64,000 nucleotides of DNA from Bugula neritina (taxonomy: Eukaryota > Animalia > Bryozoa). The stretch's first letter is position 1, and every line of letters begins with the position of its first letter. Position numbers and translations under genes: made by a program. A model generated the notes under the pieces. It worked only from the letters and a program-made list of their open reading frames with translations. It was not told where the DNA came from and ran no database searches. Shown here in pieces: positions 9,943 to 64,000 of this stretch. The DNA lies in NCBI GenBank assembly GCA_964035545.1, contig OZ037765.1, forward strand, positions 34,471,504 to 34,535,503. Reading direction: 5' to 3'.

Positions 9943-10945
9943 ATGGCTGAACTAAGAAATATTCTACCAAACTCTGACAGTACTGATGGCATACAGTTGA
10001 AGGCAGATCATGATGCAAATAGAAAACCAAAGCGAAGAGCCCATAGAACCAGATCTCAAGACCCAGAAGCTCTAAAGCAAATTAAAAAGTCAAGACGTCA
10101 AAAAGCTAATAACCGGGAAAGAAATCGAATGCATGACTTAAACTCTGCTTTAGACATCTTGAGAGAGCTTCTCCCCCAGGGTTGTGACTCGGAGAACAAA
10201 CTAACAAAAATTGAAACTCTGAGGTAAGTTATCCTTTATAAAATGAAAAGTAGTTCTTATTCCAATTTTTATAAAGTTTGAATATTTTTGATAAGCTGTT
10301 TTTAAACATACAATTTAAATTTACTAAACTTATCGGTCAATTTTATACACGTGACTTTTCCCAAATGATTATTACTAAAGGAAAATTTGCCATGTTGTTT
10401 TCTTAAAAGATTATGCTATTTGTGTCAAATTTAGGTAATATGTTTTATAAACTCTACGAAAAAAAGTCAATTTTCTTAGAATAAATAAATATTCCGGAAT
10501 ATTCTGTAGGTATGCGAGAAACTACATAGAGGCTTTGCGTGAAGCCTTGAGGTTGATGGATGATGGAAGTGAGACCAGCACCACGGAGGCCTCGGAGCAG
10601 AGTCCCGACTACAGTTTGACACAGGACCCAAACTATACACCTGCCTACCAAACCTACCAGCTAACAGAGTCTGATAACCAGACTCCAGCTTTCAAGCCTG
10701 AGCCATCTTGGCAATACAGTGGCGTATCCAGCTGCTCCCAATATTCCCCTCAGTACTCCCCCCAGCTGCAGTTCTCTTCTTCCTACACTCCTTACTCGTC
10801 TCCCCCCAGCAGTAACAACACCGTAGAATACTACTCGGACACTCCTATGTGTAGCCCGCAGTCCATTACAGAATATGGGAAACTCTGCGATGTAGAGGAG
10901 TTTCACCCCTCTTACGCCCCTCCATCTTATCCTAACTTTTACTAA
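9943..10945 (+). CDS. Ngn: Neurogenin-family bHLH transcription factor, 2 exons, ~238 aa
   Basis: Exons 9943-10223 and 10510-10945 (AG|gtaagt...ctgtag|G). b[32 protein letters not shown]...[22 protein letters not shown] fits the neurogenin consensus; S/P/Y-rich C-terminus. Confidence 0.92.
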
Positions 10946-32332: not shown

Positions 32333-35300
32333 CTAAGAGTCATCTTCTCTTTTGTGGCCATTAAACCTAGGAAACAGGTAAAGTTTTCTCATATGAGTGA
32401 GAGTATCCCAGACTACAACCAGCTGTCCTCCACTCTCTAGATTTTTATCTAAGCAAACTTTTCTCACTTTAGTCTGTACCTGAAGAACAGTTAGTAAGTT
32501 CTCTTAGCTTCTGCATTAACCAATCGGAGAAAATATCACTATTCAGGCAGTTCCCATCTTCATACTCAAGATTTCAAGGAATTTAGTGAAAAGCCAATCA
32601 ATTTAGTATAGTAATGTTAGACTCACCTGTTTGAATATAGTGTAGAGGTCATGGTGACAGGCATGTTTATGCATGGAGGATACAAGAGCTCTAATCATTA
32701 GAGATCCATACACAGGGTGAACCTTTGCTATGAATGCTACAAGAAAACACACAGTATATTACACACAGTATATTACACACAGTATATTACACACAGTATA
32801 TTACACACAGTATAATACTGTATATTACACACAGTATAATACTGTATATTACACACTGTATATTTCACACAGTATATTACACACAGTATATTACTGTATA
32901 CTACACACAGTATATTACACACAGTATATTACACACAGTATATTACACACAGTATAATACTGTATATTACACACAGTATAATACTGTATATTACACACTG
33001 TATATTTCACACAGTATATTACACACAGTATATTACACACAGTATATTACACACAGTATATTACACACAGTATATTACACACAGTATATTACACACAGTA
33101 AATTACACATGTATATTACACACAGTATATTACACACAGTATAATACTGTATATTACACACAGTATATTACACACAGTATATTACACACAGTATAATACT
33201 GTATATTACACACAGTATAATACTGTATATTACACACAGTATATTACACACAGTATATTACACACAGTATATTACACACAGTATATTACACACAGTATAT
33301 TACACACAGTTTATTACACACAGTATATTACACACAGTATATTACACACAGTATATTATACACAGTATATTACACACAGTATATTACACACAGTATATTA
33401 CACACAGTATATTACACACAGTATATTACACACAGTATAATACACACAGTATATTACACACTGTATATTACACACAGTATAATACCAAGTATTACATGTG
33501 TGTTACTTACACTCCATGCTAGATTTCACTACTAGCAGGTCATCATAGTTCAGGTTATTCATAGCCTCAGCTTCTTTGTCTCCAGGAACTTTAGCAAGTG
33601 GAGGTGAGATACTCTCCCCCTCCTTTTGTGATTCTCCGATATCAAATCTGTCTATACCTCTTTGGCCATAATCACTTCTCTCTGTAATACAGATCTCATA
33701 ATATTATATTTATTTAATATGATGAGTACAAATAATTTCAAATATGTAAAAATATAGATAACTCTGAAATTGGTTATATGTAGACACACTTAATCATTTA
33801 CTAACAGTCAAGAGAACACAACTCTGAAGTAACCACAAATGTATCGACTGATTACCTCCACTACAGACTTCCAGTATAACAACCTTTGGTTTGCCAGCCA
33901 TTCCTGGGAAGTTTAAAGGGGTCAGAAGGTCATACACATCTGTTAGTTTGACTCGTTTCAGGTCTGTACCCAAGATGTGGTTGTTCAGCCCTCCATGAGT
34001 CATGATAACCAACACATGACATCCCAGATCTTCGTGTTCCTCTTTTGTCACCTCAGATTTTACAGCAGACAGCATTTCCTACAAATATTGTAGAACACAT
34101 GGCAAAAGTTTTATCAAAATTTGGAAAAATTGCTACAACTAATAAAAATACTTTTAGGAATTTAACTCCTTTTAGATAACTTTTAAACAGTAAACCAAAA
34201 TGAAATATTGTATTTAATATTCCTAATAAAACATACCTCAGCCTTCAAGTCTGTGTGTGGCACAACATCAAACTTGAGAGATTTCAACATGGCAGACATA
34301 TTCTCAACATCAACATCTGAACCTTTCCTACACAAATCTGGTCTCTTATCAAAGTTCATGTTGTTTATTATCAGAGCTCTTCCTCTTTTTCTAGTCATAG
34401 TAAACACCTGGATGTAACAGAGAAATATTTGTTACTGCTGAACTAAACAACTGGCAAGAATGTTAAATACTCGTATTAGCGTTTAATATATGAGCACCTT
34501 GTCAGTGTTTGAGAACAGCTGTCTTATCCGTGGGTTACTGGTGGGATTCAGTCTGAGTCTTATAAACTTCATGTCTTCAACTTCCTTTCCATCAGGGTAC
34601 AGATTTTCCTCATCATCAGAGAGATCACTGAGATTGTCATTGGCTGTTATTGTGGTGGTCAAGAGATCTGATTGGCTACTGTCGACGACTATAAAGTATA
34701 AACAGACTACAATAATTAGCTACACAGGGAATAAGTAAGAAATACAATATTATGATAGCTAGCAGTTTGGTATTCAGATGCAATGCAGGAACTTCTTGTG
34801 ATGAGATCTTTCAATAAAGTGAAACTTTTAAAGAACACAAGCTTGTAAAGACTGGTCACTTTGTATTCACCAGAATTAGCTGATCTTTCTTGAGCTCTTC
34901 GAACATCCAGTTCATTCACAAATTTCTCCAACTTATCAGCTTCTCGTTCAGACAGTGGTTCACCTGAAACAATGAATTGCTTGTAAATACAGTCGGGTGT
35001 CGTGAAATCACATTATTATCCTAGTTATATTGATAAATAACTCCTTTCCGAATAAATGCACACATGTGGTAAATTGCAGTAAAATATAATTTTACAGGCA
35101 CTGCACCATAATGCAAACAAACATACATGGGTAGAGCAGAGCACTTGGGATCTCCTCGTCACCACACAGAGTTGTTGAAGATCCGCTACACAGTCTGGTA
35201 CTTGGTGGGGAATGTTTCAAAGAACGAAGACACCATTGAGGTCTTTGCACTTTCTTAGGGCAAGGAAGTCCTAGCAGAAGACAGTGAGCACAGTAGCATG

Positions 35301-38300
35301 TAGTGACAGCTCTACTTGCTGTCCAAGTTTCTAGAGCATGTTTAAGGATATTGTTGTTGTTGGTGATGAGTCTCTCCCACATTCTGCTGATGTTGGCAGC
35401 ATTAGATGATACGTAGAGTGACATTTTTCTAGATTTATGGTCGTGTACCAGCTGTGTGTAGATTCCATCTTGATAGACATTGGTGCCATTTCTTCTCACT
35501 TTTATCCTGGGAGAATCACCGGGAAACAACTCCAACAAGCCAACTGTCATTTGGTGGTAGACATAGTGTGGCAGGGCTAGACCATTGAATTGTGTCTCAA
35601 CATGAAGCAGCATGTCTTTGGGTGAGGAGTAGGGAGTGCTGTAGTAATTTTTAGCAAACTGAGGTACAATGAACCATGGGTCTTCAGACTTGCTATGTAT
35701 TGGACCATGCAGCAAACGGAACGCCTGGAGCAAGCAGATAGCAACTTCAACATTCTCAGAACTGTGAAATATTGTTTCATTTTGAATCAAATAAGCAAGA
35801 AGAGATTGCATCATCAAACCAGTGTTTGTGAAATGATTAACAGATTCCTCAAAGTCCTGCTTCTCAACAGGCATCCCATCCTTTGAATAGCACGGCTGGA
35901 ACTTGTCAACTCTACCCTGCCATATGTTAGGATCATGATGATACAAGACACAGAGAAGTTTGGTAACTTCTGAAATCTTGTGGAATATGTATGGCCTGAG
36001 AAAGCTGATATCTTTATACCACAAAACTTTGCCGCAGTCATGCATGTATGTGAGGATTATGTCCAGCTGACTTGACTCAATGGTTTGAAGTTCGGTTTGT
36101 AAGTATTTCAGTATCTCATCAAAGGTGCTGTACACAGAGGGAATAGGCAGCACTTTTTTATTTACATTCTCCCAGACCAAAGGTAAAGGTTTCACAAAAT
36201 GTTGACTGCTTTGAAGAAGAGACTGTTTGATCAGGTCAAACACTTCATACATATCATCTTTCCCCACCTCATAAATGTCCTCACCAAGAAAAACTCCTTC
36301 AGTTGATTTACTGAAATGTTTGATTTGAGCAAATTCTCCACCCAATGCTTTCTCTTCGCTTATCATCTTCTCACACAGTTGATTTGAAGTTTCTAGAAAG
36401 TTCTTTCGAAGCTTCTGAAACTCTGCATTTTGAAACTTGTCTATATGTGTAAAGATAAGTTTTGGAGCACCCAGAGTTGGGTTAGCCAGATAGAGGTGAG
36501 ACATGTAATCAAAGGCTAATCTTCTAACAGCTTCTCTGTGTGTTGATTCACTTGAAATCTCCTCATACTGTTCCATGTTGACTACTATGACTGGAATACA
36601 GTTCTGTCTCAGAGTCAGTTGATAGGTGATATGGTAGACCTCCTGGCCTCCCATATCAATGACACGGAGAACTGTACCATCCACCTCCACCTCTTCAACA
36701 TTAAACACCTTTGTTGTCTCATCTCTCACAGCATCTGGCCCTCTGTTGGTCAGAACTCTCTTTCTGTCAACATTCTGTAATGTTCTGATTAGACTGGTCT
36801 TCCCAGCCATAGTATTACCCAGCACAGCTATAGTAGCAAATGGTAAGTTTCTACCAGCACCTTTAGCCAAGTCTGTGTAGTATTGTCTCACAGCATCTAC
36901 TCCTCTCTTACATACTTCTGGTGGAGGAGAGGTGAGAGCATTACAATATTTAACATGCAGTGTACGAAGTTGAGCTAGCTGTAGTATCTCAGGATCTAAG
37001 GATGTCAGGGAGTAGTTGGAGGATATATCCAGTTCCTGCAGATTACTCAGTGTGTACACAGGAGATGGTAAACTGGTGAAGTTATTCCATGATATATCCA
37101 GTTTCTCTAACTTCTGCAAACTCTGTATGCTGAGAGAAATACAAATACTGTTTTGTACAAAAATAAATAATATAATTCCATATTATACTCTATAATATAT
37201 ATTATTATAATAAATATTTAGGATACTGCAATTATATTTATAGCATTTTGTATAGATTTTATAGCTGTTAAGAGTTAACTCCCTGATGTTTGATACAAAT
37301 TGGAGCAAGTAAATGATGCAATGCATCACCCAGTAACTGTGGATTGACTAACATTATAATATACCTCAGTATAACATTATAATATATCTCAGTATAGCAT
37401 TATAATATATCTCAGTATAACATTATAATATATCTCAGTATAGTATTATAATATATCTCAGTATAACATTATATTATATCTCAGTATAATATTATATTAT
37501 ATCTCAATATAATATTATAATATATCTCAGTATAACATTATAATATATCTCAGTATAACATTATATTATATCTCAGTATAATATTATAATATATCTCAGT
37601 ATAACATTATATTATATCTCAGTATAATATTATAATACATCTCAGTATAACATTATAATATATCTCAGTATAACATTATAATATATCTCAGTATAATATT
37701 ATAATATATCTCAGTATAATATTATATTATATCTCAGTATAACATTATAATATATCTCCGTATAACATTATATTATATCTCAGTATAATATTATAATATA
37801 TCTCAGTATAATATTATAATATATCTCAGTATAACATTATAATATATCTTAGTATAACATTATAATATATCTCATAATAGACATAATTATAATATTATAA
37901 GTCACTCTGATTAGGCTAAAATATTACGTCATAAGTTTCTACACAATTATATTGACTTTATGTTTATATATTATATTTATTACAGTATCATTCTACACTA
38001 TAATATAATACACACCTGTTTGGTAGAGTTGACAGTTTACAGTTCTCCATGTACAACTCTCTCAATGATAGTAAGGATGTGAATATATTGTCAGGTAGAC
38101 CTTCAGATAGGTTATTCGCTGATATATCCAATACCTCAAGATTCTTCAGTGAAGATATGCTGTAACATAACATACAAGTAGAAAATCATGAAAGGTAATT
38201 GAACTATATACTGTACATTCTACTCAACAATATCATAAGAGGTCACTTATGAGCATTTCATAATATTATAGCAACTTTATATCCCAACATTTATCAGATT

Positions 38301-41300
38301 AAAAAGTTCCAAGTTGTCACACCATGTCTTGCTGAGTACATCTGATAGAATAGAATAGTAAAGACATGACATCACATATATTATGTATAATGATTTATAT
38401 AATGTAATTAGTTGATACAAGTCAGTTTATGTACATCACAAGAGATTAGAAGCTTCTACACAATTATTTAATAATACATTTACATATTGTATTTATTCTA
38501 GTATCATTCTACACTATATTATAATACACACCTGTTTGGTAGAGTTGACAGTTTACAGTTCCTGATGTCTAACTCTCTCAATGATAGTAAGGATGTGAAT
38601 ATATTGTCAGGTAGATCTTCTAATAGGTTATTCCATGATATATCCAATATCTCAAGATTATTCAGTGAAGATATGCTGTAACATAACATACAGGTATGAC
38701 AGTATTTACTTATATATAATCATCACATATTGGTATGCTTTAAATTGAAGCATAAATAGAAATACAATAAAGAAGGTAAATAATACAAAAGTTGTTACTA
38801 AAGCTAGTGTTATTGTGAGGGGAGATTACTCAACATTCTACTACAAGATAATATCTCACCTATGAATATAGTTTTATACCATAGCAATATAATACCTGGT
38901 CCAGTCAACATTACTGTCTACTCCAGATACCCTCAGATGTGTGAGATGAGGAAACAGTTTGTTGATATTTGGGGGAATGTCATACTCCATTCTAACATGA
39001 GTAACTGTATGATGTCTACTTATATCATTGATCTCTTCTATAGTGTAGGATGTAGTATCATTTTTCATCCATTTATCATCAGCTCCATCTATACTGGATG
39101 TGTTGAACCACACCTCGTACTTCTCTATAAAATATTCACCACTTTATAAATAATAACTTTGATATCAAATAATGGAGTGTCTCAACACTATAAACAGTGT
39201 TGAAGTAAACTTGGATATTTTATAACTTCAAAATACATTCTGTGATATATTCTGACAGGTGAAAGGGTAGCCATGTTGTTTATACTTCTGTACAGTATAT
39301 GTTATTGTATCGGTTTTGTGTTAGTGTCTGGTTGCAAGATAAGCTTTAACTACTAGCCAACTTGGCAACAGGTTTTCAAGTTTATTTACTCTCAAATCGT
39401 ACCAATATTGATGCATAGATAAACTTCTTAGCCATCACAATGCCAAAACCGATAGTTTATTCTCACAAAGAGTGTAAATATTGGTGTCTAACTGTGTGCT
39501 CGTATAATGCTAAAAATGCTCCTTTCTGGCGGTTTGGTTATGACACACTGACTCATGCAGTACAGTGAATTAGTACTAGCCCTGCCAGCTAATAATAGCT
39601 TTGGTGAAAGCTTTGAAGCCTGAAAGCTTTAATGATTGGCTGCCTGCCAATACATCTGGGTGGCATACCAATACAGTTATAATATAATATAATATAATAT
39701 AATATAATATAATATAATATAGTATAATATAATATAATACAATATATACTACACACATACTACCACATACTACATATTTCAGTTATATAATATAATATAA
39801 TATAATATAATATAATATATAATAAAGACTAACAACATAATACAGACAACATTACTACTCCCTCTGGTTACTATAGTTACTCAGTTGTTGACAGAACACA
39901 GCTGTAAGGAAAGTAAAATATAACATAATATATTTATATTTTATTCTGTACACTAACTGAAACTGTATGTAAAGGATTAACATGGTCATGTTGTTTATAG
40001 TTCTGTACTGCATGTGTTATGATATATTAATATATTAATATAATATAATACAATATAGTACAATATAATATGATGTAGGTTAGTATAATAGTTACAATAT
40101 AATGCAAATTAAATAACAACATGTTATAGTATGGGTCAACATAATATTTGTTATATAATATAATATATGTCAGTATAATAAAACAACATACTATACTATA
40201 ATTTAATATGATATGATCCGGCCACACGGCAGTGAAAGGTGACCACCACTATAATATACTATAATACAATATAATATAATATAATACAATATAATATACT
40301 ATAATACAATATAATATAATATAACATAATATAATATAATATAATATAACATAATATAATATAATATAATATAATATAACATGATATAATATGGTATAAG
40401 TCAGTATAATAGTTATAGTATAATAGTTATAATAGTTATAGTATAATAGTTAAAGTATAATAGTTATAGTATAATAGTTATAGTATGATAGTTATAGTAT
40501 GATAGTTATAATATAATAGTTATAGTATAATAGTTATAGTATAATAGTTATAGTATAATAGTTATAGTATAATAGTTATAGTATAATAGGTATAGTATAA
40601 TAGTTATAGTATAATAGTTATAGTATAATAGTTATAGTATAATAGTTAGAGTATAATAGTTATAGTATAATAGTTATAGTATAATAGTTATAGTATAATA
40701 GTTATAGTATACTAGTTATAGTATGATAGTTATAATAAATAATAGTTATAGTATAATAGTTATAGTATAATAGTTATAGTATATATATATATATAAATAA
40801 GCAGGTATATAACATTACATAATAAACACTATAACAAAACAGAACTAGGTGCAAAGTAATGAAACTGTAGATTAGAAATGTAAGAGAAGAAGTTATGTTC
40901 TCATGAGAATTTAAATGAAGAGATCTCACTCAACACTGTATATAGAAATACATGGGTGAAACTAAATCATTATAACTAACAATCAGTATATAATATTATA
41001 TAATATATAACATTATATAATAGACACCAGCAAAATATTATTCAGTTGTGGTAAAATTAGTGCAGGGTAAAAAAATGAAAATCGCATGTGTTTCTAGATC
41101 AGAAATGTAGCAAAAGAAGTTATGTTCTCGTGAGAATGTAAACCTGCACCCCAACGTATAGTTTGTTAAGAACAATAAAGAACTTAGGCTACCTCAATTT
41201 CTCCACCACTGTAACTAAATGTCATAACATATAAAAGTAAAATATAAAAGTTCTGTAGTTAGTAGTTGAAGTATTTATATCCATATAATTTACTAACCTA

Positions 41301-41394
41301 ACACAGACTGACCTGAAGGTGGAGGTGAAGGTGGAGGTGTAGATGGAGGTGTAGGTGGAGGTTTGGGTCGAAGTAGCGATTTACTTTGACCCAT
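32333..41394 (-). CDS. LRR-Roc-COR-caspase fusion protein (Roco-caspase), copy 1, 12 coding exons, ~1235 aa
   Basis: Exons 41394-41313, 39124-38896, 38675-38532, 38159-38016, 37129-35127, 34963-34871, 34688-34498, 34407-34237, 34078-33856, 33681-33511, 32736-32627 and 32479-32333: all GT-AG, phases match, 3708 nt, no internal stop. Domains in order: MGQSKS + Pro-rich, LRRs, P-loop GNTMAGKTS / DMGGQ / THID, COR-like region, then caspase (RGRALIINN, RKGSDVD, IMTHG, GKPKVVILEVCSG, TLTHMRKLYLFP). Confidence 0.88.
32748..33482. repeat. 14-bp CACAGTATATTACA minisatellite filling a caspase-region intron
   Basis: Tandem copies occupying nearly the whole 32737-33510 intron. Confidence 0.95.
35127..37129 (-). 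CDS. Large exon of copy 1: last LRRs + Roc GTPase + COR
   Basis: ORF 35092-37119 trimmed to splice sites. It carries Roco hallmarks (L..PP.EV...G..AV..Y before Roc; G1, G3 and G4 motifs; L.Y.HD.G.VLWY in COR). Confidence 0.9.
37349..37875. repeat. 23-bp CAGTATAACATTATAATATATCT minisatellite (copy-1 intron)
   Basis: Same unit as the array at 59605-64000. Confidence 0.95.
40404..40785. repeat. 14-bp TATAGTATAATAGT minisatellite, preceded by (ATAAT)n tracts from ~39680
   Basis: Tandem copies. Confidence 0.9.
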
Positions 41395-46202: not shown

Positions 46203-47070
46203 TGACTCACTGAATAACCTGGTAACTCACTGAATGACCTGGTAACTCACTAAATAACCTGGTAACTCACTGAATAACCTAGTAATTCACTGAATAACCT
46301 GGTAACTCACTAAATAACCTGGTAACTCACTGAATAACCTGGTAACTCACTGAATAACCTGGTAACTCACTGAATAACCTGGTAACTCACTGAATAACCT
46401 GGTGACTCACTGAATAACCTGGTAACTCACTGAATAACCTGGTAACTCACTAAATAACCTGGTAACTCACTGAATAACCTGGTAACTCACTGAATAACCT
46501 GGTAACTCACTGAATAACCTGGTAACTCACTGAATAACCTGGTAACTCACTGAATAACCTGGTAACTCACTGAATAACCTGGTAACTCACTGAATAACCT
46601 GGTAACTCACTGAATAACCTGGTAACTCACTGAATAACCTGGTAGCTCACTGAATAACCTGGTAACTCACTGAATAACCTGGTAACTCACTGAATAACCT
46701 GGTAACTCATTGAATAACCTGGTGACTCACTGAATAACCTGGTAACTCACTGAATAACCTGGTAACTCACTGAATAACCTGGTAGCTCACTGAATAACCT
46801 GGTAACTCACTGAATAACCTGGTAGCTCACTGAATAACCTGGTAACTCACTGAATAACCTGGTAACTCACTGAATAACCTGGTAACTCACTGAATAACCT
46901 GATAACTCACTGAATAACCTGGTGACTCACTGAATAACCTGGTAAGTCACTGAATAACCTGGTAACTCACTGAATAACCTGGTAAATCACTGAATAACCT
47001 GGTAACTCACTGAATAACCTGGTAACTCACTGAATAACCTGGTAACTCACTGAATAACCTGGTAACTCAC
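46203..47070. repeat. 20-bp GGTAACTCACTGAATAACCT minisatellite starting at the NOL11 exon-6 donor
   Basis: ~43 very homogeneous copies; each carries GTGAGT on the minus strand. Confidence 0.96.
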
Positions 47071-50000
47071 GAACTCAGAATCAGCAGACAGTCTCAAACT
47101 GCCCATCATGCTCCTTAGTGTCAACTTGCTGTACTTATATGAGTGAGCCTGCAATGAGCTCTCCGTGTGAGTCAGTATGTATGGAGGTAGAAGAGTCACA
47201 GGTTTATCACCGTAGAGCTCACTGTCCAGACTCTTTAGAACCCTCGTAGTTCTGAACTTGATACTGAATATAAGTAAGACACCTACAAGACCAGCACATG
47301 TCACCATACTTGAGCTGTGACACGTCTAAACAGGTGCTATGAGTACAGCTACACTGATTGGCTTACATCTACTCACATTCAAGTAAAGGAGGCATACAGT
47401 TACAGTAAAACTACTTTACTAGAACAATCATCTTCAGAAAAGGTAAACTATACTAGCCTGTATTCGTAGAGCTGTGAGATGTTGCAATGAGAAGCTGGTC
47501 AGAGTCTAGTAGGTGAAGAGAGACACACTGAGTAGAAAACTGTGAGTTGAGAGAGGAAATAACTTTTTCAGATGTACCGGTAGAGTATAGTATCTCACCC
47601 TTACCACCTGTATAGAGTATTTCAGATAAACTGGTTATTGTAAAGGTGACGTCATACAGAGACACAGTATATATTCAATAGTATCAGACTCACTAGTAGC
47701 AATGTAATTAGACTCAGCATGAGGGACAACTCTACACACTGATGTCACATCTGTGTAGTTGAGAAACACCTGCGTAGATTTGCCAAACACCTGCTTGTCG
47801 TTGAACTGTAACTTATATACAAGGTGTTGTCCCTGAAATAACACAACAGAAACTGTAGATATTTCAACAGCAATGATGATGATGCATGTCAACAACTGTG
47901 ACACTCTACTGTGACACTCTACTGTGACACTCTACTGTGACATTCTACTGTGACACTCTACTGTGACACTCTACTGTGACACTCTACTGCGACACTCTAC
48001 TGCGACACTCTACTGCGACACTCTACTGCGACACTCTACTGCGACACTCTACTGTGACACTCTACTGTGACACTCTACTGTGACACTCTACTGTGACACT
48101 CTACTGCGTCACTCTACTGCGACACTCTACTGCGACACTCTACTGCGACACTCTACTGCGACACTCTACTGCGACACTCTACTGCGACACTCTACTGCGA
48201 CACTCTACTGCGACACTCTACTGTGACACTCTACTGTGACACTCTACTGTGACACTCCACTGCGACACCCTACTCTGACACCCTACTGTGACACTCTACT
48301 GTGACACTCTACTGTGACACTCTACTGTGACACTCTACTGCGACACTCTACTGCGACATTCTACTGTGACACTTTACTGTGACACTCTACTGAGACATTG
48401 TGACACCATACTGACACATTGTGACACCATACTGACACATTGTGACACCATACTGACACATTGTGACATCATACTGACACATTGAGATACTCACATCAAC
48501 AGTCACAATGTAGACAATCTCAGTTCTATTACTCCATCTGTAACTTTTAAACTGACTAATCTCCACGTCAGCATCTCTCAGATCTGGAGGCAGCAGATGG
48601 AGAGACAGTGAAGTGTCCTCCACATGAGACAACCAGCACACACAGTTATTAGATGTGACCACCAGTGGTTCTGTCTTCTCTACTTCTACCAGTTCAGTCA
48701 CCTCAGTTGATAACTACAACAGTTACACTTGTATTGTGAACCAATCATCATTAGGTTATCATTCTCCATATTCTATTCTCACCACTTCAACATTTCTAAT
48801 GCTATAAATATGCTCCACCAAATGATCAACAAATTGTGTTATCGTAAACATATTATTTTATAAATCACAAAACAACTGAAATATTCAAAGTGAGAAATTT
48901 ACCAGTTTCTTCTTCCAGTCCTTGTAGTTAGAAAGTTCATTTGTCCAGACACAAAGTCTCTTCTTTCCAAGATTCTCAACCAAACCAACATAATGTTCTT
49001 CTTCGCGATCATAAACCACAGGCAGACAGAAACTGCTCTCTGATTTGAGAGTACAACTTGATACTGTCTGCTGATCACTCACCTAAGTTTATCACAACTC
49101 AAACTCTAGTATTTATTAATATTCTAAACTGAAAACTACTCTCATGAACGAAGCATATAAACACATGTAGAGTTATTATTACTTTCAGTAATAATTTATT
49201 CCACAGTGAATTATATGAGAAAGAAGCTCTACTGCAGAGAATACTCATCCAGGCCGGTCAAACTCTGAAATAACTAAATTTATTTCCTCAACTCATTAGC
49301 AAAATTCTAAGATCGTTTCAAAAGCGATACAAACAACTCATCATAGCATAAATTTTAAGGCCATTTAGAATTAGTTTAGCAAATACATAAAGGCTATCTT
49401 GATTATGCATGATTTTAAATTGAACTACAGTGGTTGATTTATGATGATTACTCGATAACTAGGTATGAATAAAATAAATTTTAAAGTAATCAAAGGCTAA
49501 GTTAGTAAATGTGTGTCATCACATTTCAATACTCAATAGTAATCACTGAAATTTACTCTAAATATTTATTAGGAGTCAGTGCCATTCACCGAAAGACTTA
49601 ATTAAAAAGTTAGTATCAACCGATTTAATCCAATACTTATAGTTATTACGAATTAGTCAATTCAAAATCAAGTTGAAAAAAAATTCCTGCGTATTTACAT
49701 CGATTATCATAATAATTAATAACTGGTTGACTCGGCATCACTCAGAGCTGCATTAGCCCCATGCTGAATTGATTTTACTATTATAGCACTATTCACTTTT
49801 CAGCGATTGTGAGAGACTTTGACCAAGTGCTTAGTCAGTAAGAGTAAGTTTTTATTTAATTTTACTAAAACACTTTAACTTAGTTTCGCTTATAGTTATT
49901 GAGTTATTCATACTGTGATTATCACTATTCGTACAAATACAAGTCATGAAGTAGACTTTAACTAATAGTTAGTGTTACAGTAACTAACTAAAGTTGTGTT

Positions 50001-51861: not shown

Positions 51862-54800
51862 TCACTGTGGGAGTTGTCTGCCATGGAACTTTGGAAAGAA
51901 GAAAAGTTTTCTAAGGTGAGTGAAAGTACATTCCTGACAATTAGGTACATTACCACCAGCTGCTTCATCTCCTGTCTTCTTACAATATGCAATACTGACT
52001 CGTCTAACTCTGTCTTGTATCTATAAGTATAAATATAAGAGAAATATAAAGCTGATGACTCAACACACTCCACAGTATCATACAAAGAGTAATACTGGAG
52101 TACTTACTATCCTAAACAGCTCACTAACATCTCTGTGACAGCTGTGTCTGTAGAATGTAGCCACCAGTATTCTGATAAACCAGGTACCATAATTCTCATT
52201 CCTACCAGCCTTATAAGCTGCAACATATGAAAATGAGCAGTTAAATGTGAATGTCAGACTATTATGTAAATTTGTTTATATTTAAAAATTGCAATAGCTT
52301 TATTTACATGCAACAGTTTAATTTGCACCAATAAAAGTTTCAGTCAACTCAAATATAATTTTTTTCTCACTAACTTTCTGTACTTGGCTTCACAATGTAG
52401 AAGTCATCAGCATCTAGGTGAGTGAATCTATCAAAGTGAATATTTGGAGACACATGTTGACCTGCAGAAGACTCACTCCCAGCTGTTGCAGAAGATGAGG
52501 GTAGAGGGGTTGGTGTTGGTGGTGAGACGGTGTCTGGGCTTTGTGACTGTGCAGCATTACCAAAGTCAGCTCTGCCTGTAAAAGAAATACATACAATGTA
52601 GACTCTGTGATATGATGGTGAGTAATAAGTTAGGACTGGATTCACAAACAGAACTCTATTACACAGCACTGTTTATTGAATTCTAGTTATGAGGTGTAGC
52701 TGATTTCCACATAGGCATACTCCAATAACATTAGGCATCTTGAAAATAATGATTTGTTAAATTAATTAATGTTATAGTTATAGGAAATTATGCAATCTAA
52801 CTGCTAGTTCTAGTAACATGAGGAACAACTCTGCGTTACTCACTGCCAGAACAGGCATGGAAGATGATGAGTTTGGGTTTTCCTCTCATGGCAGGAAATT
52901 TACTAGCTGAGAGTAGATCTTTGACTTCTGACAAGTTGACAGGTTTACAGTGTCTGTCATAGAAGATGTTTCCAGAAGTTCCGTGTGACATGATGACTAG
53001 AATGAACATGCCAAGATCTTTGTGGTCTCTGTGGGTGGTCTCCTTCCTCACTTCTGATAATATCTCCTGGCAGAATAAAAGTATATAATGGTGTGTAAAA
53101 CAAGTTTGAATGAGTAAATGTGTCTACGCCAAAGCCAAAGCTGCTTCAAAATTACACTATAACATTTATAACAAAGATGAACCATTAAACAGTGCTGCTG
53201 TAATAATTTTATGCATGGAATGTTATGATTCGCTGCATGTAATTATTGGTGTGGGTTATTAGCTGATGGAACACAGTGACTCTTTGTTGAGAATACTTAT
53301 TAATAAATAGATAAAAAGGTTTATACTCACTATCCTTTATTGCACTCCAATATATGTATCCAAAAATAGAAAAAGAGTTAGGGAGGATAACTCCTTACAT
53401 CACGTGGAAAACTATGTACTACTATTATTCTAGGTATAAAGGAAATAGCTATGCACTAAGTATACAAATGTCCTGGTTTGGTAGCTCCGAGTTGTGTCTT
53501 CATCTGATGCTGGCAGTAGACTGAATTCACTGATGTGAGGGCTTCCTTTTATATGTTGGGATGTAGCTAGCCTAGAAAGTTCCATGCAAATTCGAGCGAG
53601 TTCGCTCGAATTGCAGGGGATTCGCAGGGTCATAACAAAAGGTTCGCAGGAATTCGCTCGAATCGAGCGAACTTCGAAGGGAAATCCTAGTCATCTTTAT
53701 TATGTGAGCAGTCCTATGCGTAGCTAGGAACAATAACTGATCCCGTCATTACCATCATGACACTTGGCTGTTAATGGACTGGGGCTATGCAAATGGTTTA
53801 TTTAGGAAAAACACGCATTCCATGGGAATGAAAGAAATACTAGTAAGGAAATACACGCAACAATTACAATATACACAATTTTACCACACACACAGGATAG
53901 TTAAGGGCAAACTTTTAGCTGCAACTGCCTTGCTGAGGTTTGCATTGTAATCATATAAGAATTTAGTGCCAGTAAAATAAAATCTCACCTAAGTGTGCTA
54001 GAGTCAAAATTTAAAAACTCTGTTGTAGACCTTTTTTCCCCCAGTGTAACTTTCTTGGAAATTTCAATTTTCGTTTTTTTTGCAAAGTTATAGACAAAAA
54101 ACTGCCCAATTTTGGCCAATTTTGCCTGAAAAGCTGACTTTTCAGTGCCAGAAAAAATATCTCAGCAGCAAAACATGATATCTGAATAAAAATTGCACTG
54201 CTGGAATCCTGAGATATTTCTCCAGTGCAATTTTTTTCTTTCTCCGATAACTCTTCTAGATTGCCCATAAATTGGTGATTTATACACTCGATCTGATAAG
54301 AAAACTCTGCCAGGATTTCAAGCCAGCGCGCTATTTGGCTTGATGGTTCAGCCCGTCGACACAGCCATATCAAGGACGCATGGTCCGTTCTTAGCCTGAA
54401 CGTGTGTCCGTACAGGTATGGTCTAAAGTGTTTAACCGCCTTGACTACTGCCAGGAGTTCTCTCCTGGTGGTGCAGTAGTTCTTTTCAGGCGTCGACAGG
54501 GCCTTACTATGGTAAGCTACCACCACCTCGCGACCATCTTGGACTTGAGTCAGCACAGCCCCCACATTGTGGTTACTAGCATCAGTATCCAAAATGTACT
54601 CCTTCGCCGGATTAGGTTACGCCAAGATGGGCGCCTCTACCAAACGATCCTTGAGGTGGTCAAATGCCTGCTGTTCTGTCTGTGTCCACTGCCATCGCAC
54701 CCCCTTTGCTGTCAGCCGGTTTAGTGGCTGTGCAATTCCTGCGAAGTTCGGTATGTGCTGACGATAGTACCCTACCAGTCCCAGGAATGCCCGCAATTCA

Positions 54801-57800
54801 GGGAGGTCGACAGGGACAGCCCAGTCTCTCACAGCCCGTACCTTCTCGGGGTCGGTGGCGACCCCGGCTCCACCGACTACATGGCTCAGGTACTTAATCT
54901 CTTGCTGCAACAACGTGCACTTAGAGGGCTTGAGCTTCAGACCAGCAGCTCGAAGTCTGTCAAACACCTCTCTGATCCAACTGACCTGTGTGTCAAAGTC
55001 GGGGGAGATGACAATGACATCATCGAGATAGATGAGCAAGGTCTTCCAGTGCAGCCTACTCAGGACCTGCTCCATGAGTAGCTGAAAGGTGGCCGGTGCG
55101 GGCGTAAGTCCGAACATCAGTACCTTCCATTTCCAGAGCCCATCCCGCGGCCTTGTCCTGTGCATCAGGACTCAGGGGCACCTGCCAATACCCGCTTAGC
55201 AAGTCCAACGTGCTGAAGAACTTGCTACAAGCGAAGGCATCTAACGACTCATCATTCCTAAGAAGAGGGTAAGCATCCTGGATGGTCATGCTGTTCAGTT
55301 TGCGATAATCCAAGCAAAACCGCCAGCAACCATCCTTTTTTCGAACCAGGACAACTGGCGAGCTCCAAGCACCATTGGCTGGCTCAATCATGTCCTGGCT
55401 CAGAAGGTCTTGCACCTGTCTGCTCACTTCCTTCTCCTTCTCAGGACCTAACCGGCGGGTCGGCTGCCTGATAGGCACCATCCCAGCCGCCAGGGGTATC
55501 TCATGACAGATAGCCTTAGCTAGGCCCATGTCGTGATCGCCGCAACTGAACATATCTTTGTACTCAGGGAGGAGCTGCACTACTACTAGGCATTCCCGCT
55601 TGCTCTCACAGGCATCCCCGCACAATTCCACCAAGTGTTCAGGCACCGGCCCCCTGCCGTCCCTAGTGGGTACCCATCGAGCCTCGTCCGCTGTTTCCAG
55701 GGCGGGACCAACATCCTCCTCCTGTATGGAGTGGAATTTCCCCACTAGCGACCCAGCCAGCAATTCTACCGACTCCGTGAAAGGGTTTACGCACTGTACC
55801 AGAAACTCCCCCCTCTCATCCAGCCTATTCAGACTGTTGGCGAGCTGGACGCCCTCCAGTGCTCCCTCCACCACTCCTAAATTGGAGATTTCCCCACAGT
55901 TCACTCTGCAGCGAACTGTAGCCCGAGAGCGCCCAGGTACAGTACAACGCTGTACCACCTGCACTTCCACCACCAAGGGTCGGCCAAATCGGTCGACACA
56001 GGCCAGCTCACGCCCGGCAATCACCACCGCCGACTTGCTAAAGTCGATGTAGCACCTGTGTCGCTTCAGAAATGGCATGCCCAAGATGGCGTCCTCCTTG
56101 ATTGGCCAAGACGATCAGGCCATCCTAGCAGCCTGACACCAGCTGCTTCACTCAACTATTGGCAAAAAGTATTCTTTTGATACAAATACAAAATACTAAT
56201 AATCTACTAATAATACAATTATTAATACAATTAACACACTATGAAAAACCCTTACAATATCACAGCTAGCTACAGCCTGGGGATAATCAACTACAGGAAA
56301 GGATAAGAAATTGATACAGTAACCTGTTTACTCAGGTCAAACAGAGGATCATCTTCATTGGCTACAACAAATCCCATGTCTTTCAACAGAGTTTTGATGT
56401 TAACATAGTCGATGTATGAACCATCTCGGGTTGCCTCAGTCAGTTCACTGCCATCATCTCTAAAGAATCTCTCATTGTTTATGATCATGACACGACCTCT
56501 AACAGGGTTACTCATCGCATAAACCTGTAAACCAATCAATTTTATCTTACTAAGAGTAGACAACAGAAAACGGGCTAATCAAATCAAGTATGAAATGTAA
56601 TAGAAATTAAATGAAAAGCCAAAGTATCAAAAAAATATTAATCAATGATCTAAAAAGAAATCAAAGAACTTGTTTTACCTGTCGGTGGTTGTCAAACAGC
56701 TGTTTTACTGGTTCATTGTTGGTAGGTTTCAGCTGCATACCCTCAACCTGAGATATAAAAGGTTCAAAGTCATCTTTAGTGAAATCAGCATATCCTTCTT
56801 CTTCTATATCAGAGCATTCACTGATGTTGTCGTCTTCAACAAGGACTGAGGCAGTTTGAGTTAACAAACTCTTTTCTCCACCCATCTCTAAAATAAAACA
56901 AAAGGTGATATATTCAGTGCTAAGTAACAGATACTAAATATCAAAATGACTGTAAACAATGAACAGAATCAATATTTGAGTGTTTTTCTGTCAATAATTA
57001 TACAAATAAATTACAACAATTGAAGGTGTGTGAGTTTTTGCAGAGAGCCTATATAACTGAGGGTCATGAGTTCTTGTCTATTGCTGTTTACATATGACTG
57101 AGCTCAGGCAAAGGGTGCTACTTTTAACAGTAACAATTTATGATAGACAACTGATCATACCAGAAACAGTTGAAGCAGTCCCTTCTCTTGCAGATCTCAG
57201 TTTGGTGACACATTCTTTTATGTTATCAGCTTCTTCTGGAGAGAGAGGACTGCCTGGAGAATGAAAAACTGTCAGTTACCACAAAAATCATTACAATAAT
57301 AGAAGTTGATAAATAAACCACAGAGAAATCAACTGTTTTATTGAAATAAAATTAGACGTACATGGATACAGAAAAGCACTGGGTATCTCCTCATCACCAC
57401 ACAGGGTTGTTGAAGATCCGCTGCACAGTCTGGGACTTGTTGGGGTAGAATGTTTCAAAGAGCGAAGACACCACGGAGGATTGAGTACTTTGTTAGGACA
57501 AGGAAGTCCTAGCAAAAGACAGTGAGCACAGTAGCATGTAGTGACTGGTCTACTCGCTGACCAAGTTTCTAGGACATGTCTAAGGATGTTGTTGTTGGTG
57601 GTGATGAGTCTCTCCCACATTCTGCTGATATTGGCAGCATTAGATGACACGTGGAGTGACACTTTTCGAGATTTGTAGTCGTGTACCAGCTGTGTGTAGA
57701 TACCATCTTGATAGACATTGGCGCCATTTTTCTTCACTTTAATCACAGCAAATTCATCGCAAAACAACTCTAGCAAACCAACATTCATCTGCTGGTAGAC

Positions 57801-59367
57801 ATATTGTGGTAGCGCTAAGCCATTGAATTGGGTTTCAACTCGAAGAAGCATATTCTTTGGCGAAGAGTAAGAGGTATTAAAGAAGTCATTAGCAAACTGA
57901 GGAACAATAAAACATGGCTCCTTGAAATCAGCAGGTAAAGGACCATATAACAAACGGAATGTGAGGAGCAAGCAAACAGCAACTTTTACATCTTCCAGAC
58001 TGGTAAATGGTGTTTCTTGTTTAACCAGATGAGTGAGAAGACATTGCATCATCAAACCAGTCTCAGTGAAATGATTAACAAATCTCTCAAAGTCTTCTTT
58101 TTCAACAGGCATCCCATCCTCTGAAAAATATGGCTGGAACTTGTCAACTCTACTCTGCCATATGCTAGGATCATGATGATACAAGACACAGAGAAGTTTG
58201 GTGACTTGTGAAATCTTGTGGAATATGTATGGCCGGAGAGAGCTGATATCTTTATACCACAAGACTTTGCCGCAGTCATGCATGTATGTGAGGATTATGT
58301 CCAGCTGACTCGATTCAATTTGTTGAAGTTCGGTTTGCACATATTTCAGTATCTCATCAAAGGTGCTGTACACAGAGGGAATAGACAGCACTTTTTCATT
58401 TACTTCCTCCCAGACCAAAGGTAAAGGTTTCACAAAATGGTGACTGCTTTGAAGAAGAGACTCTTTGATCAGGTCAAACACTTCATACTTATCATCTTTC
58501 CCCACCTCATAAATTTCCTCACCAAGAAAGACTTCTTCAGTTGATTCACTAAAATGTTTGATTTGAGCAAATTCTCCACCCAATGCTTTCTCTTCTTTAA
58601 TCATCTCTTCACACAGCTGATTGGAAGTGTCTAGAAAGTTCGTTCGAAGCTCCTGGAATTCCACATTTTGAAACTTATCTTTATGTGTGAAGATAATTTT
58701 TGGAGCACCCAGGGTTGGGTTAGCCAAGTAGAGGTGAGACATGTAATCAAAGGCTAATCTTTTAACAGCTTCTCTGTGTGTTGATTCATTTGAAACCTCT
58801 TCGTACTGTTCCATGTTGACTACTATGACTGGAATGCAGTTCTGTCTCAGTGTCAGTTGATAAGTGATATGATAGACTTCCTGGCCTCCCATATCTATGA
58901 GACGGAGTACTGTACCATCCACCTCCACCTCTTCAACATTAAACACCTTTGTTGCCTCATCTCTCACAGCATCTGGTCCTCTGTCGGTCAGAACTCTCTT
59001 TCTGTCAGCATTCTGTAATGTTCTGATTAGACTGGTTTTTCCAGCCATCGTATTACCCAGCACAGCTATAGTAGCGAATGGAAGACTTCTACCAGCTCCT
59101 TTAGCCAAGTCTGTGTAGTATTGTCTCACAGCATCTACTCCTCTCTCACATACTTCCAGTGGAGGAGAGGTGAGAGCATTACAATTTTTAACATACACTG
59201 TACGAAGTTGAGTTAGCTGTAATATCTCAGAATCTAAGGATGTCAAAGAGTAATTGGAAGATATATTCAGTTCTTGCAGATTAGTCAGTGTGTACACAGG
59301 AGATGGTAAATTGGTGAAGTTACTTGACGATATGTCCAGTTCTTTTAACTTCTGTAGAATCTGTATG
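51862..59367 (-). CDS. LRR-Roc-COR-caspase fusion protein, copy 2 (5' exons beyond window end)
   Basis: Exons 59367-57362, 57253-57161, 56887-56679, 56524-56324, 53066-52844, 52575-52375, 52217-52108 and 52020-51862 are GT-AG, in phase and have no stops. Motifs: GNTMAGKTS / DMGGQ / THKD; caspase RGRVMIINN, IMSHG, GKPKLIIFHACSG, GRNENYGTWFI, RKLFFFP. Confidence 0.88.
53570..53690. mobile_element. Small palindromic element (TTCGCTCGAA/TCGAGCGAA motifs, CTAG ends)
   Basis: CpG-rich, self-complementary ~120 bp in an AT-rich intron. Confidence 0.45.
54286..56130 (-). mobile_element. Decayed Ty3/Gypsy LTR-retrotransposon pol fragment (protease remnant, RT, RNase H)
   Basis: ILGMPFL; SSPVVLVRKKDG.WRFCLDYRKLN; LDLLSGYWQV; YLDD; DTDAS..NYCTTRRELLA..TDHASL. 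Frameshift near 55150, stop at 54617, no integrase or LTRs; GC-rich relative to the flanks. Confidence 0.93.
57362..59367 (-). CDS. Large exon of copy 2: LRRs + Roc GTPase + COR
   Basis: ORF 57291-59486 trimmed to splice sites; close paralog of 35127-37129. Confidence 0.9.
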
Positions 59368-59604: not shown

Positions 59605-62600
59605 TTATAATATATCTCACTATACTATTACAATATATCGCAGTATAATATTATAATATATCTCAGTATAACATTACAATATATCGCAGTATAATATTAT
59701 ATTATATCTCAGTATAACATTATAATATATCTCAGTATAACATTATATTATATCTCAGTATAACATTACAATATATCTCAGTATAACATTATATTATATC
59801 TCAGTATAATATTACAATATATCTCAGTATAACATTATAATATATCTCAGTATAATATTAAAATATATCTCAGTATAACATTATATTATATCTCAGTATA
59901 ACATTATAATATATCTCAGTATAACATTATAATATATCTCAGTATAACATTATAATATATCTCAGTATAATATTATATTATATCTCAGTATAGTATTATA
60001 ATATATTTTAGTATAACATTATAATATATCTCAGTATAATATTATATTATATCTCAGTATAATATTATAATATATCTCAGTATAATATTATAATATATCT
60101 CAGTATAACATTATAATATATCTCAGTATAACATTATAATATATCTCAGTATAATATTACAATATATCTCAGTATAACATTATATTATATCTCAGTATAA
60201 CATTATAATATATCTCAGTATAACATTATAATATATCTCAGTATAACATTATATTATATCTCAGTATAACATTATAATATATCTCAGTATTATATTATAA
60301 TATATCTCAGTATAATATTATAATATATCTCAGTATAATATTATATTATATCTCAGTATACATTATATTATATCTCAGTATAACATTATAATATATCTCA
60401 GTATAATATTACAATATATCTCAGTATAATATTATAATATACCTCAGTATAACATTATATCATATCTCAGTATAACATTATAATATATCTCAGTATAACA
60501 TTATAATATATCTCAGTATAATATTATAATATATCTGAGTATAACATTATATTATATCTCAGTATAACATTATAATATATCTCAGTATAACATTATCATA
60601 TATCTCAGTATAACATTATATTATATCTCAGTATAACATTATAATATATCTCAGTATAACATTATAATATATCTCAGTATAACATCATATTATATCTCAG
60701 TATAATATTATAATATATCTCAGTATAACATTATAATATATCTCAGTATAATCTTAAAATATATCTCAGTATACATTATATTATATCTCAGTATAACATT
60801 ATAATATATCTCAGTATAACATTATAATATATCTCAGTATAACATTATAATATATCTCAGTATAATATTATATTATATCTCAGTATAGTATTATAATATA
60901 TTTTAGTATAACATTATAATATATCTCAGTATAATATTATATTATATCTCAGTATAATATTATAATATATCTCAGTATAATATTATAATATATCTCAGTA
61001 TAACATTATAATATATCTCAGTATAACATTATAATATATCTCAGTATAATATTACAATATATCTCAGTATAACATTATATTATATCTCAGTATAACATTA
61101 TAATATATCTCAGTATAACATTATAATATATCTCAGTATAACATTATAATATATCTCAGTATTATATTATAATATATCTCAGTATAATATTATAATATAT
61201 CTCAGTATAACATTATATTATATCTCAGTATAATATTATAATATATCTCAGTATAACATTATAATATATCTCAGTATAATATTACAATATATCTCAGTAT
61301 AATATTATAATATACCTCAGTATAACATTATATCATATCTCAGTATAACATTATAATATATCTCAGTATAACATTATAATATATCTCAGTATAATATTAT
61401 AATATATCTGAGTATAACATTATATTATATCTCAGTATAACATTATAATATATCTCAGTATAACATTATCATATATCTCAGTATAACATTATATTATATC
61501 TCAGTATAACATTATAATATATCTCAGTATAACATTATAATATATCTCAGTATAACATCATATTATATCTCAGTATAATATTATAATATATCTCAGTATA
61601 ACATTATAATATATCTCAGTATAATCTTAAAATATATCTCAGTATACATTATATTATATCTCAGTATAACATTATAATATATCTTAGTATAATATTATAA
61701 TATATCTCAGTATAATATTATAATATATCTCAGTATAATATTATAATATATCTCAGTATACATTATATTATATCTCAGTATAACATTATAATATATCTTA
61801 GTATAACATTATAATATATCTCAGTATAATATTACAATATATCTCAGTATAATATTATAATATACCTCAGTATAACATTATAATATATCTCAGTATAATA
61901 TTATAATATATCTCAGTATAACATTATAATATATCTTAGTATAATATTATAATATATATCAGTATAACATTATAATATATCTCAGTATAATATTATATTA
62001 TATCTCAGTATAATATTATAATATATCTCAGTATAATATTATAATATATCTCAGTATAACATTATAGTATATCTCAGTATAACATTATAATATATCTCAG
62101 TATAATATTACAATATATCTCAGTATAACATTATAATATATCTTAGTATAATATTATATTATATCTCAGTATAACATTACAATATATCTCAGTATAACAT
62201 TATAATATATCTCAGTATAACATTATAATATACCTCAGTATAACATTATATTATATCTCAGTATAATATTATAATATATCTCAGTATAATATTATATTAT
62301 ATCTCAGTATAACATTATAATATATCTCAGTATAACATTATATTATATCTCAGTATAACATTATATTATATCTCAGTATAACATTATAATATATCTCAGT
62401 ATACATTATAATATATCTCAGTATAACATTATAATATATCTCAGTATAACATTATAATATATCTCAGTATAACATTATAATATATCTCAGTATAACATTA
62501 TAATATATCTCAGTATAATATTATAATATATCTCAGTATAACATTATAATATATCTCAGTATAATATTATAATATATCTCAGTATAACATTATAATATAT

Positions 62601-64000
62601 CTCAGTATAACATTATAATATATCTCAGTGTAATATTATATTATATCTCAGTATATCATTATAATATATCTCAGTATAGTATTATAATATATCTCAGTAT
62701 AACATTATAATATATCTCAGTATAGCATTATAATATATCTCAGTATAACATTATAATATATCTCAGTATAGCATTATAATATATCTCAGTATAACATTAT
62801 ATTATATCTCAGTATAACATTATATTATATCTCAGTATAACATTATAATATATCTCAGTATAACATTATAATATATCTCAGTGTAACATTATAATATATC
62901 TCAGTATAATATTATATTATATCTCAGTATAGTATTATAATATATCTCAGTATAACATTATAATATATCTCAGTATAACATTATAATATATCTCAGTATA
63001 ATATTGTAATATATCTCAGTATAACATTATAATATATCTCAGTATAACATTATAATATATCTCAGTATAACATTATATTATATCTCAGTATAATATTAAA
63101 ATATATCTCAGTATAACATTATAATATATCGCAGTACAACATTATAATATATCTCAGTATAACATTATAATATATCTCAGTATAACATTATATTATATCT
63201 CAGTATAACATTATATTATATCTCAGTATAACATTATAATATATCTCAGTATAACATTATAATATATCTCAGTATAATATTATAATATATCTTAGTATAA
63301 CATTATATTATATCTCAGTATAGTATTATAATATATCTCAGTATAACATTATAATATATCTCAGTATAACATTATAATATATCTCAGTATAATATTGTAA
63401 TATATCTCAGTATAACATTATAATATATCTCAGTATAACATTATAATATATCTCAGTATAACATTATATTATATCTCAGTATAACATTATAATATATCTC
63501 AGTATAATATTATAATATATCTCAGTATAATATTATATTATATCTCAGTATAACATTATAATATATCTCAGTATAACATTATAATATATCTTAGTATAAC
63601 ATTATAATATATCTCAGTATAACATTATATTATATCTCAGTATAATAATATAATATATCTCAGTATAACATTATATTATATCTCAGTATAATATTATAAT
63701 ATATCTCAGTATAACATTATATTATATCTCAGTATAACATTATAATATATCTCAGTATAACATTATATTATATCTTAGTATAATATTATAATATATCTCA
63801 GTATAATATTATAATATATCTCAGTATAATATTATAATATACCTCAGTATAACATTATAATATATCTCAGTATAATATTATAATATAATATCTCAGTATA
63901 ACATTATAATATATCTCAGTATAACATTATAATATATCTCAGTATAACATTATAATGTATCTCAGTATAACATTATATTATATCTCAGTATAATATTATA
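59605..64000. repeat. >4.3-kb 23-bp minisatellite (copy-2 intron), runs off window
   Basis: Unit CAGTATAACATTATAATATATCT with variant units; some longer blocks recur (higher-order duplication). Confidence 0.97.

What the first reader, a model, noticed from the sequence alone, without database searches (positions are those of the whole stretch)
32333..41394. Intact LRR-Roc-COR-caspase fusion gene: a candidate single-chain sensor-GTPase-protease receptor
Seen: 12 exons splice with canonical sites into one 1235-aa ORF joining LRRs, a Roc GTPase with intact G1/G3/G4 motifs, COR, an acidic linker and a complete caspase (large and small subunit) keeping the His (THG) and Cys (EVCSG) dyad. The ORF track shows only disconnected pieces. 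Established: Roco proteins (LRRK, MFHAS1, DAPK1) dimerise via COR in a nucleotide-dependent way, and initiator caspases are activated by induced dimerisation, normally via separate CARD/DED adaptors. Inference: LRR ligand sensing drives a Roc-COR dimer switch and direct caspase activation, i.e. an adaptor-free inflammasome/apoptosome analogue using a GTPase instead of a STAND ATPase. I do not know of a characterised animal protein with this architecture, but I could not search databases.
Basis: partly seen in the sequence, partly recalled or inferred. Interest (0 to 1): 0.95.

Follow-up and report, generated by a model that had tools for sequence, protein, structure and literature searches.

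The report
Bryozoan LRR-Roco-caspase fusion gene
This is a real, spliced animal gene, probably of a bryozoan, that joins a variable leucine-rich-repeat surface, a Roc-COR GTPase switch and a caspase in one protein; the layout has been glimpsed in amphioxus and bacteria but no test of it was found, and here family members swap caspase tails and this copy has an altered substrate pocket.

Summary
Confirmed. Twelve GT-AG exons give a stop-free 1235-aa frame; 1240 aa is likelier, using a conserved exon-1 donor 15 nt downstream. RNA-seq contigs from four studies show the Roc-COR-to-caspase joints, though from many paralogs and none spanning the gene. A tandem paralog (59367-51862) keeps exons 5-12 and their phases. 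Exon 5 folds like LRRK1/CtRoco.

The layout is not unique: it occurs in Watersipora RefSeq proteins and at least 11 amphioxus proteins. Papers mention amphioxus 'LRRs-caspase' genes (PMC2575513) and bacterial LRR-Roc-COR-caspase (PMC8195603). I found no functional test. This scan noted the family before on other DNA of this genome.

Added here: (1) the two neighbours share an 83%-identical Roc-COR exon but carry caspases of different lineages, so tails were swapped (AU p 2.5e-6 and 1e-78); (2) this copy keeps His/Cys but has Glu and Val at the Gln283 and Arg341 positions, so Asp cleavage is doubtful; (3) a bacterial Roco monomerises on GTP, so the switch direction is open. Best reading: adaptor-free immune or cell-death receptor (0.55).

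The parts
41298..41394 (-). Gene A exon 1: ATG, Pro-rich N-terminus. Donor at 41312 (reader) or, more likely, 41297
   Evidence: homologous exon and ATG in L005 (72% over 109 nt); upstream in-frame stops; no RNA test
38896..39124 (-). Gene A exon 2: N-terminal cap region, no Pfam hit
   Evidence: 37-71% identical exons in L002, L005, L007
38532..38675 (-). Gene A exon 3: 144-nt phase-2 double-LRR cassette
38016..38159 (-). Gene A exon 4: 144-nt phase-2 double-LRR cassette (83% identical to exon 3)
35127..37129 (-). Gene A exon 5: last LRRs, Roc GTPase (G1, G3, G4), COR, Cys/His-rich end
34871..34963 (-). Gene A exon 6: post-COR helix
   Evidence: proxy model
34498..34688 (-). Gene A exon 7: acidic linker and start of the caspase module
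   Evidence: disordered in proxy model
34237..34407 (-). Gene A exon 8: caspase large subunit N-part with the Arg179-equivalent (34329-34327)
33856..34078 (-). Gene A exon 9: caspase large subunit with catalytic His (THG) and Cys (EVCSG; Glu at the Gln283 position)
33511..33681 (-). Gene A exon 10: inter-subunit linker and start of small subunit
32627..32736 (-). Gene A exon 11: small subunit; Val at the caspase-1 Arg341 position
   Evidence: weak E 0.04 alone, register confirmed by alignment
32333..32479 (-). Gene A exon 12: end of small subunit and TAG
   Evidence: 75-88% identical exons in paralogs
51862..59367 (-). Gene B: tandem paralog, exons 5-12 with the same phases, no stops; near-identical Roc-COR but a different caspase lineage (SHG, HACSG, Arg341 kept); its 5' exons lie beyond the window
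54011..56084 (-). Broken retroelement fragment (RT, RNase H; no LTRs found) inside gene B intron 8

Best explanation
The gene belongs to an expanded bryozoan family of cytosolic single-chain receptor-proteases that work like an NLR plus initiator caspase without a death-fold adaptor. Shown: one spliced frame with LRR, Roc, COR and caspase; variable numbers of LRR cassette exons with variation concentrated on the concave face; a caspase tethered by a disordered acidic linker (in a Watersipora proxy model); exchange of caspase tails between front modules. Inferred: the LRRs bind an invader or danger molecule, this changes the nucleotide state of Roc and so the COR-mediated dimer, and dimerisation brings two tethered caspase domains together to activate them. 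By analogy with CtRoco (GTP = monomer) and MASL1 (loss of GTP raises toxicity), the likeliest direction is GTP-bound monomer = off and GDP or empty dimer = on. This copy probably cuts with altered specificity or weakly.
For: Frame and motifs; RNA joints; paralog phases; fold; G1/G3/G4 kept in 46/49/47 of 49 relatives; catalytic Cys motif in all 10 Watersipora and 12 amphioxus fusion proteins checked; 2 to 6 or more LRR cassettes per gene and surface pN 0.30 vs 0.11, permutation p 0.0007; effector swap; amphioxus Rocos with caspase, glycosyltransferase, OTU or Death tails interleave in one clade; published bacterial analogue (PMC8195603); mechanisms in PMC11052575 and PMC3995007.
Against: No ligand, activity or expression-response data. 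Surface dN/dS is 0.82, so positive selection is not shown. Gene A lacks Arg341 and Gln283, and PMC11121540 treats Arg341 loss as predicting a non-functional caspase. RNA contigs are short, 88-99% alike, and come from many paralogs or strains. No dimer model was made.
Confidence: 0.55

Rival explanations
1. The family are receptor-proteases, but this copy is a regulator or helper: its caspase domain heterodimerises with an active paralog (as cFLIP does with caspase-8), for example the neighbouring gene B whose Roc-COR is 83% identical and so may pair with it.
For: Val at Arg341 and Glu at Gln283. Ile at 341 in L002, L005 and in expressed contigs while L007, L009, L013 keep Arg. Shared COR between A and B.
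Against: His, Cys and the Arg179-equivalent are all kept across the A-type caspases, which are 75-89% identical; known pseudo-caspases usually lose the Cys (own knowledge).
Confidence: 0.25
2. The proteins act in endogenous programmes (allorecognition between colonies, polypide regression, metamorphosis) and not in sensing microbes.
For: Colonial bryozoans show allo-incompatibility (mentioned in PMC8195603). Contigs were found in many RNA runs of one organism.
Against: Cassette-type LRR variation and effector swapping resemble invader-driven systems (PMC11378527, PMC8195603). No direct data either way.
Confidence: 0.15
3. Annotation artefact: a Roco gene and a caspase gene lie side by side and are transcribed apart.
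For: No single contig spans Roc to caspase. Some Watersipora models end before the caspase (P0038, P0121).
Against: Introns of 90-182 nt between the modules, joints seen in 3-4 studies, same order and phases in gene B and caspase exons downstream in all 12 distinct loci fetched, full-length models in two other lineages.
Confidence: 0.03

Closest known systems
Amphioxus 'LRRs-caspase' hybrid genes (Zhang et al. 2008, PMC2575513); e.g. XP_002614028, XP_035697785
   Same: LRRs and caspase in one chain, proposed as a shortcut from recognition to apoptosis. Amphioxus proteins fetched here carry Roc and COR between the two.
   Different: The paper does not mention a GTPase and I could not confirm that its models are these proteins (alignment held as image). 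Amphioxus caspases keep QACRG and Arg341; about 22-27% identity to the bryozoan proteins; separate clades in both trees.
Prokaryotic AP-GTPase (Roc)-COR counter-invader proteins (Kaur et al. 2021, PMC8195603)
   Same: Variable N-terminal LRRs, Roc-COR, interchangeable C-terminal effectors that include caspase; several paralogs per genome.
   Different: Computational prediction in bacteria. Here the gene is spliced, the protease is an animal-type caspase with large and small subunits, and the LRRs are cassette exons.
MFHAS1/MASL1, LRRK1/2, DAPK1, CtRoco
   Same: LRR-Roc-COR core; fold match E about 1e-22; RefSeq names the Watersipora relatives 'MFHAS1 homolog'.
   Different: No caspase; single-copy or few genes; 12-16% identity in structural alignment.
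Brown algal LRR-ROCO genes (PMC11378527)
   Same: Expanded family, phase-2 symmetric LRR exons, proposed immune receptors.
   Different: 72-nt single-LRR exons versus 144-nt double-LRR exons; no caspase; diversifying selection reported there, not shown here.
NLR inflammasomes and the Apaf-1 apoptosome
   Same: Sensor repeat, nucleotide switch and proximity-driven caspase activation (functional logic, inferred).
   Different: STAND ATPase and separate caspase recruited through CARD/PYD/DED; here a small GTPase with the caspase fused.

Membership tests
Roco proteins | Roc domain with G1, G3, G4 motifs | tested here: met
   Pfam Roc 30.5 bits over cut-off 27; GNTMAGKT, DMGG, THID
Roco proteins | COR directly after Roc | tested here: met
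   Pfam COR-A below cut-off, but the model aligns over the whole LRR-Roc-COR of LRRK1 and CtRoco and to isolated COR 3dpt
Roco proteins | GTP binding, hydrolysis and nucleotide-dependent oligomer change | not testable with these tools
   needs biochemistry
Caspases (C14A) | Caspase fold with large and small subunit | tested here: met
   Pfam C14 in exons 8-9; PDB caspase hits for exons 8, 9, 11
Caspases (C14A) | His-Cys catalytic dyad | tested here: met
   THG and EVCSG align to SHG and QACRG of CED-3
Caspases (C14A) | S1 pocket Arg179, Gln283, Arg341 for P1 Asp | tested here: not met
   Arg kept; Glu for Gln; Val for Arg341. Watersipora and amphioxus relatives mostly keep all three
Initiator caspases | CARD or DED prodomain | tested here: not met
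   No death-fold hit in the exons scanned; exons 1, 6, 7, 10 are short low-complexity or linker pieces and were not scanned
NLR / STAND receptors | NACHT or NB-ARC ATPase | tested here: not met
   The NTPase is a Ras-like Roc
LRR-AP-GTPase-COR-effector systems (Kaur 2021) | Variable LRR + Roc-COR + interchangeable effector | tested here: met
Amphioxus LRR-Roc-COR-caspase genes | Common origin of the fusion | tested here: inconclusive
   Separate clades in both trees; single origin of the caspases not rejected (AU p 0.114, only five non-Roco caspases)

The most novel reading that the evidence does not exclude
Bryozoans use a large, recombining family of GTPase-gated single-chain caspase receptors as a main intracellular immune or self/non-self system, mixing shuffled LRR cassettes with swappable caspase tails, some of which (like this gene) have evolved a non-Asp cleavage specificity.
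Probability: 0.3. Interest if true: 0.85.

Novelty: new variant of a known kind. Interest (0 to 1): 0.62.

Why it matters
What the Roc-COR switch does is a long-standing question in the LRRK2 field. A natural Roco with a protease output gives a direct readout of which nucleotide and oligomer state is 'on'. It would also be an animal route from sensing to caspase activation that needs neither a STAND ATPase nor a death-fold adaptor, present in two distant phyla. The A-type caspases with and without Arg341 are a natural series for testing whether an animal caspase can leave Asp specificity.

Tried and rejected
The joined protein was never sent to a search or folding tool; it was translated only inside a script to check the frame, and exon pieces were concatenated locally for one tree. 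A full-length fold of gene A was therefore left out, and Watersipora XP_067947674 (350-1419) served as proxy.

The search for related loci gave nothing: alignment too divergent, no confirmed hit in metagenome contigs, none in prokaryotic genomes with the amphioxus Roc-COR. So bacterial Roc-caspase proteins were not retrieved, and that point rests on the paper.

N-myristoylation (MGQSKS) was considered, but Gly2 is not kept in the paralog L005; 11 of 50 relatives start with MG, so it stays a weak lead. Positive selection on LRR faces was not shown (dN/dS 0.82). Eight literature searches found no paper on bryozoan Roco-caspases; the library lacks most subscription journals. My first exon-2 boundary was off by one and was corrected.
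Full report
Gene model. On the minus strand twelve exons (41394-41313, 39124-38896, 38675-38532, 38159-38016, 37129-35127, 34963-34871, 34688-34498, 34407-34237, 34078-33856, 33681-33511, 32736-32627, 32479-32333) are all bounded by GT-AG and give 1235 aa without a stop. Pfam finds LRRs, Roc and the caspase domain exon by exon. COR is below the Pfam cut-off, but an AlphaFold model of exon 5 (pLDDT 86.9) matches LRRK1, CtRoco and LRRK2 over the whole LRR-Roc-COR. Exon 1 has a homologue in paralog L005 with the same ATG; there only the downstream GTTAGT donor is conserved, so 1240 aa is more likely.

Transcription. Contigs from four runs of four studies (RNA by guess or by library record) skip the 163-nt intron between COR and the linker in three runs, approximately the 182-nt intron in three, the 90-nt and 158-nt introns in all four and the 174-nt intron exactly in three; loose ends at 33511 resemble exon 11. 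The contigs are short and 88-99% alike, so they represent the family or other strains, and none spans the gene.

Family. A second gene lies 10 kb upstream on the same strand (59367-51862). It has the same eight exons and phases, no stops, and a retroelement fragment in intron 8. All twelve distinct public loci fetched show caspase exons downstream of the Roc-COR exon. The closest named relatives are Watersipora subatra RefSeq proteins at 31-39% identity, several with LRR, Roc-COR and a complete caspase. The window is therefore inferred to be another bryozoan; the species was not determined here. At least eleven amphioxus proteins from B. floridae, B. belcheri, B. lanceolatum and hybrids carry LRR, Roc, COR and Peptidase_C14.

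Tail swapping. Genes A and B are 83% identical in exon 5 but 33-47% in exons 6-12. L002 is the reverse: 52% in exon 5 and 75-86% in the caspase exons. The Roc-COR tree places A and B in one clade (SH-aLRT 99). The caspase tree places B with Watersipora caspases (99/97). Each data set rejects the other's grouping (AU p 2.5e-6; 1e-78). The simplest reading is recombination or gene conversion at the phase-1 intron after exon 5, joining an A-type front to an older caspase lineage. In amphioxus, Rocos ending in caspase, glycosyltransferase, OTU or Death interleave. Whether the bryozoan and amphioxus fusions arose once or twice is unresolved (p 0.114 with few outgroups). Rows left out: P0148 from the Roc-COR tree (degenerate P-loop); L001, L006 and L010 from the caspase tree (incomplete or duplicate).

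Sensor end. The LRRs sit in 144-nt phase-2 cassettes whose number varies from two here to six or more. Among 14 close cassettes the ten concave-face positions vary far more than the rest (pN 0.30 vs 0.11, permutation p 0.0007), with dN/dS 0.82 vs 0.46. That shows concentrated variation, not positive selection. It parallels brown algal ROCOs (PMC11378527).

Protease end. His and Cys align with those of CED-3 and the Arg179-equivalent is kept. The Gln283 position is Glu and the residue aligned to caspase-1 Arg341 is Val. All A-type paralogs have Glu; position 341 is Arg in three and Ile or Val in three distinct genes. Gene B has His at 283 and Arg at 341. A review treats Arg341 substitution as predicting loss of function (PMC11121540). 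In the Watersipora proxy model the caspase folds well and hangs from COR by a helix and a disordered acidic linker.

Mechanism. Initiator caspases are activated by dimerisation (established knowledge). GTP-bound CtRoco is an open monomer (PMC11052575) and loss of GTP makes MASL1 more toxic (PMC3995007). I infer that a ligand, or a drop in GTP loading, shifts the protein to the COR dimer and pairs the tethered caspases. The opposite direction (GTP-driven opening releases the caspase) is not excluded. None of this is tested.

Prior knowledge. Zhang et al. 2008 reported amphioxus LRRs-caspase hybrids as shortcuts from recognition to apoptosis without noting a GTPase. Kaur et al. 2021 described bacterial LRR-AP-GTPase-COR proteins with at least 24 effector types including caspase. 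I found no paper on the bryozoan family or any functional test. This scan's earlier notes report the same family on other pieces of this genome, with counts of 50-69 genes that I did not check.

Verdict. Real gene, new variant of a known but apparently untested kind. Interest 0.62.

Noticed in passing
window 36008 joined to 34409: Contigs in two runs join mid-COR directly to the exon 8 acceptor region (1598 nt skipped, 50-66 letters on the short side); could be a deleted paralog, a splice variant or an assembly artefact.
   Followed up: no
window 54011-56084 (-): Broken RT/RNase H retroelement fragment without detectable LTRs in intron 8 of gene B; the orthologous intron is short in L004 and L008.
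   Followed up: partly
window 37400-37880 and 59680-64000: The same AT-rich minisatellite of about 23 nt lies upstream of exon 5 in both genes, much expanded in B; the A/B nucleotide similarity runs through this intron.
   Followed up: no
exon 5, aa 600-750 of gene A: A/B identity drops to 54-72% in this COR stretch against 82-96% elsewhere, including third codon positions; suggests patchy gene conversion.
   Followed up: partly
L007:13529-14489: Exon 10 appears duplicated in this paralog.
   Followed up: no
P0148 (XP_067948342): Watersipora member with a degenerate P-loop but intact caspase motifs: a possible GTPase-dead variant.
   Followed up: no
P0053 (XP_013415104, Lingula anatina): LRR-Roc-COR-CARD protein: the adaptor-using counterpart of the fused form, in a related phylum.
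   Followed up: partly
P0309 (Lingula anatina): RIG-I-like helicase model carrying a caspase domain, another sensor-caspase fusion.
   Followed up: no
window about 47000-49100 (-) and 10535-10945 (+): Exon-like pieces of other genes; the 10535 ORF has no Pfam hit.
   Followed up: no
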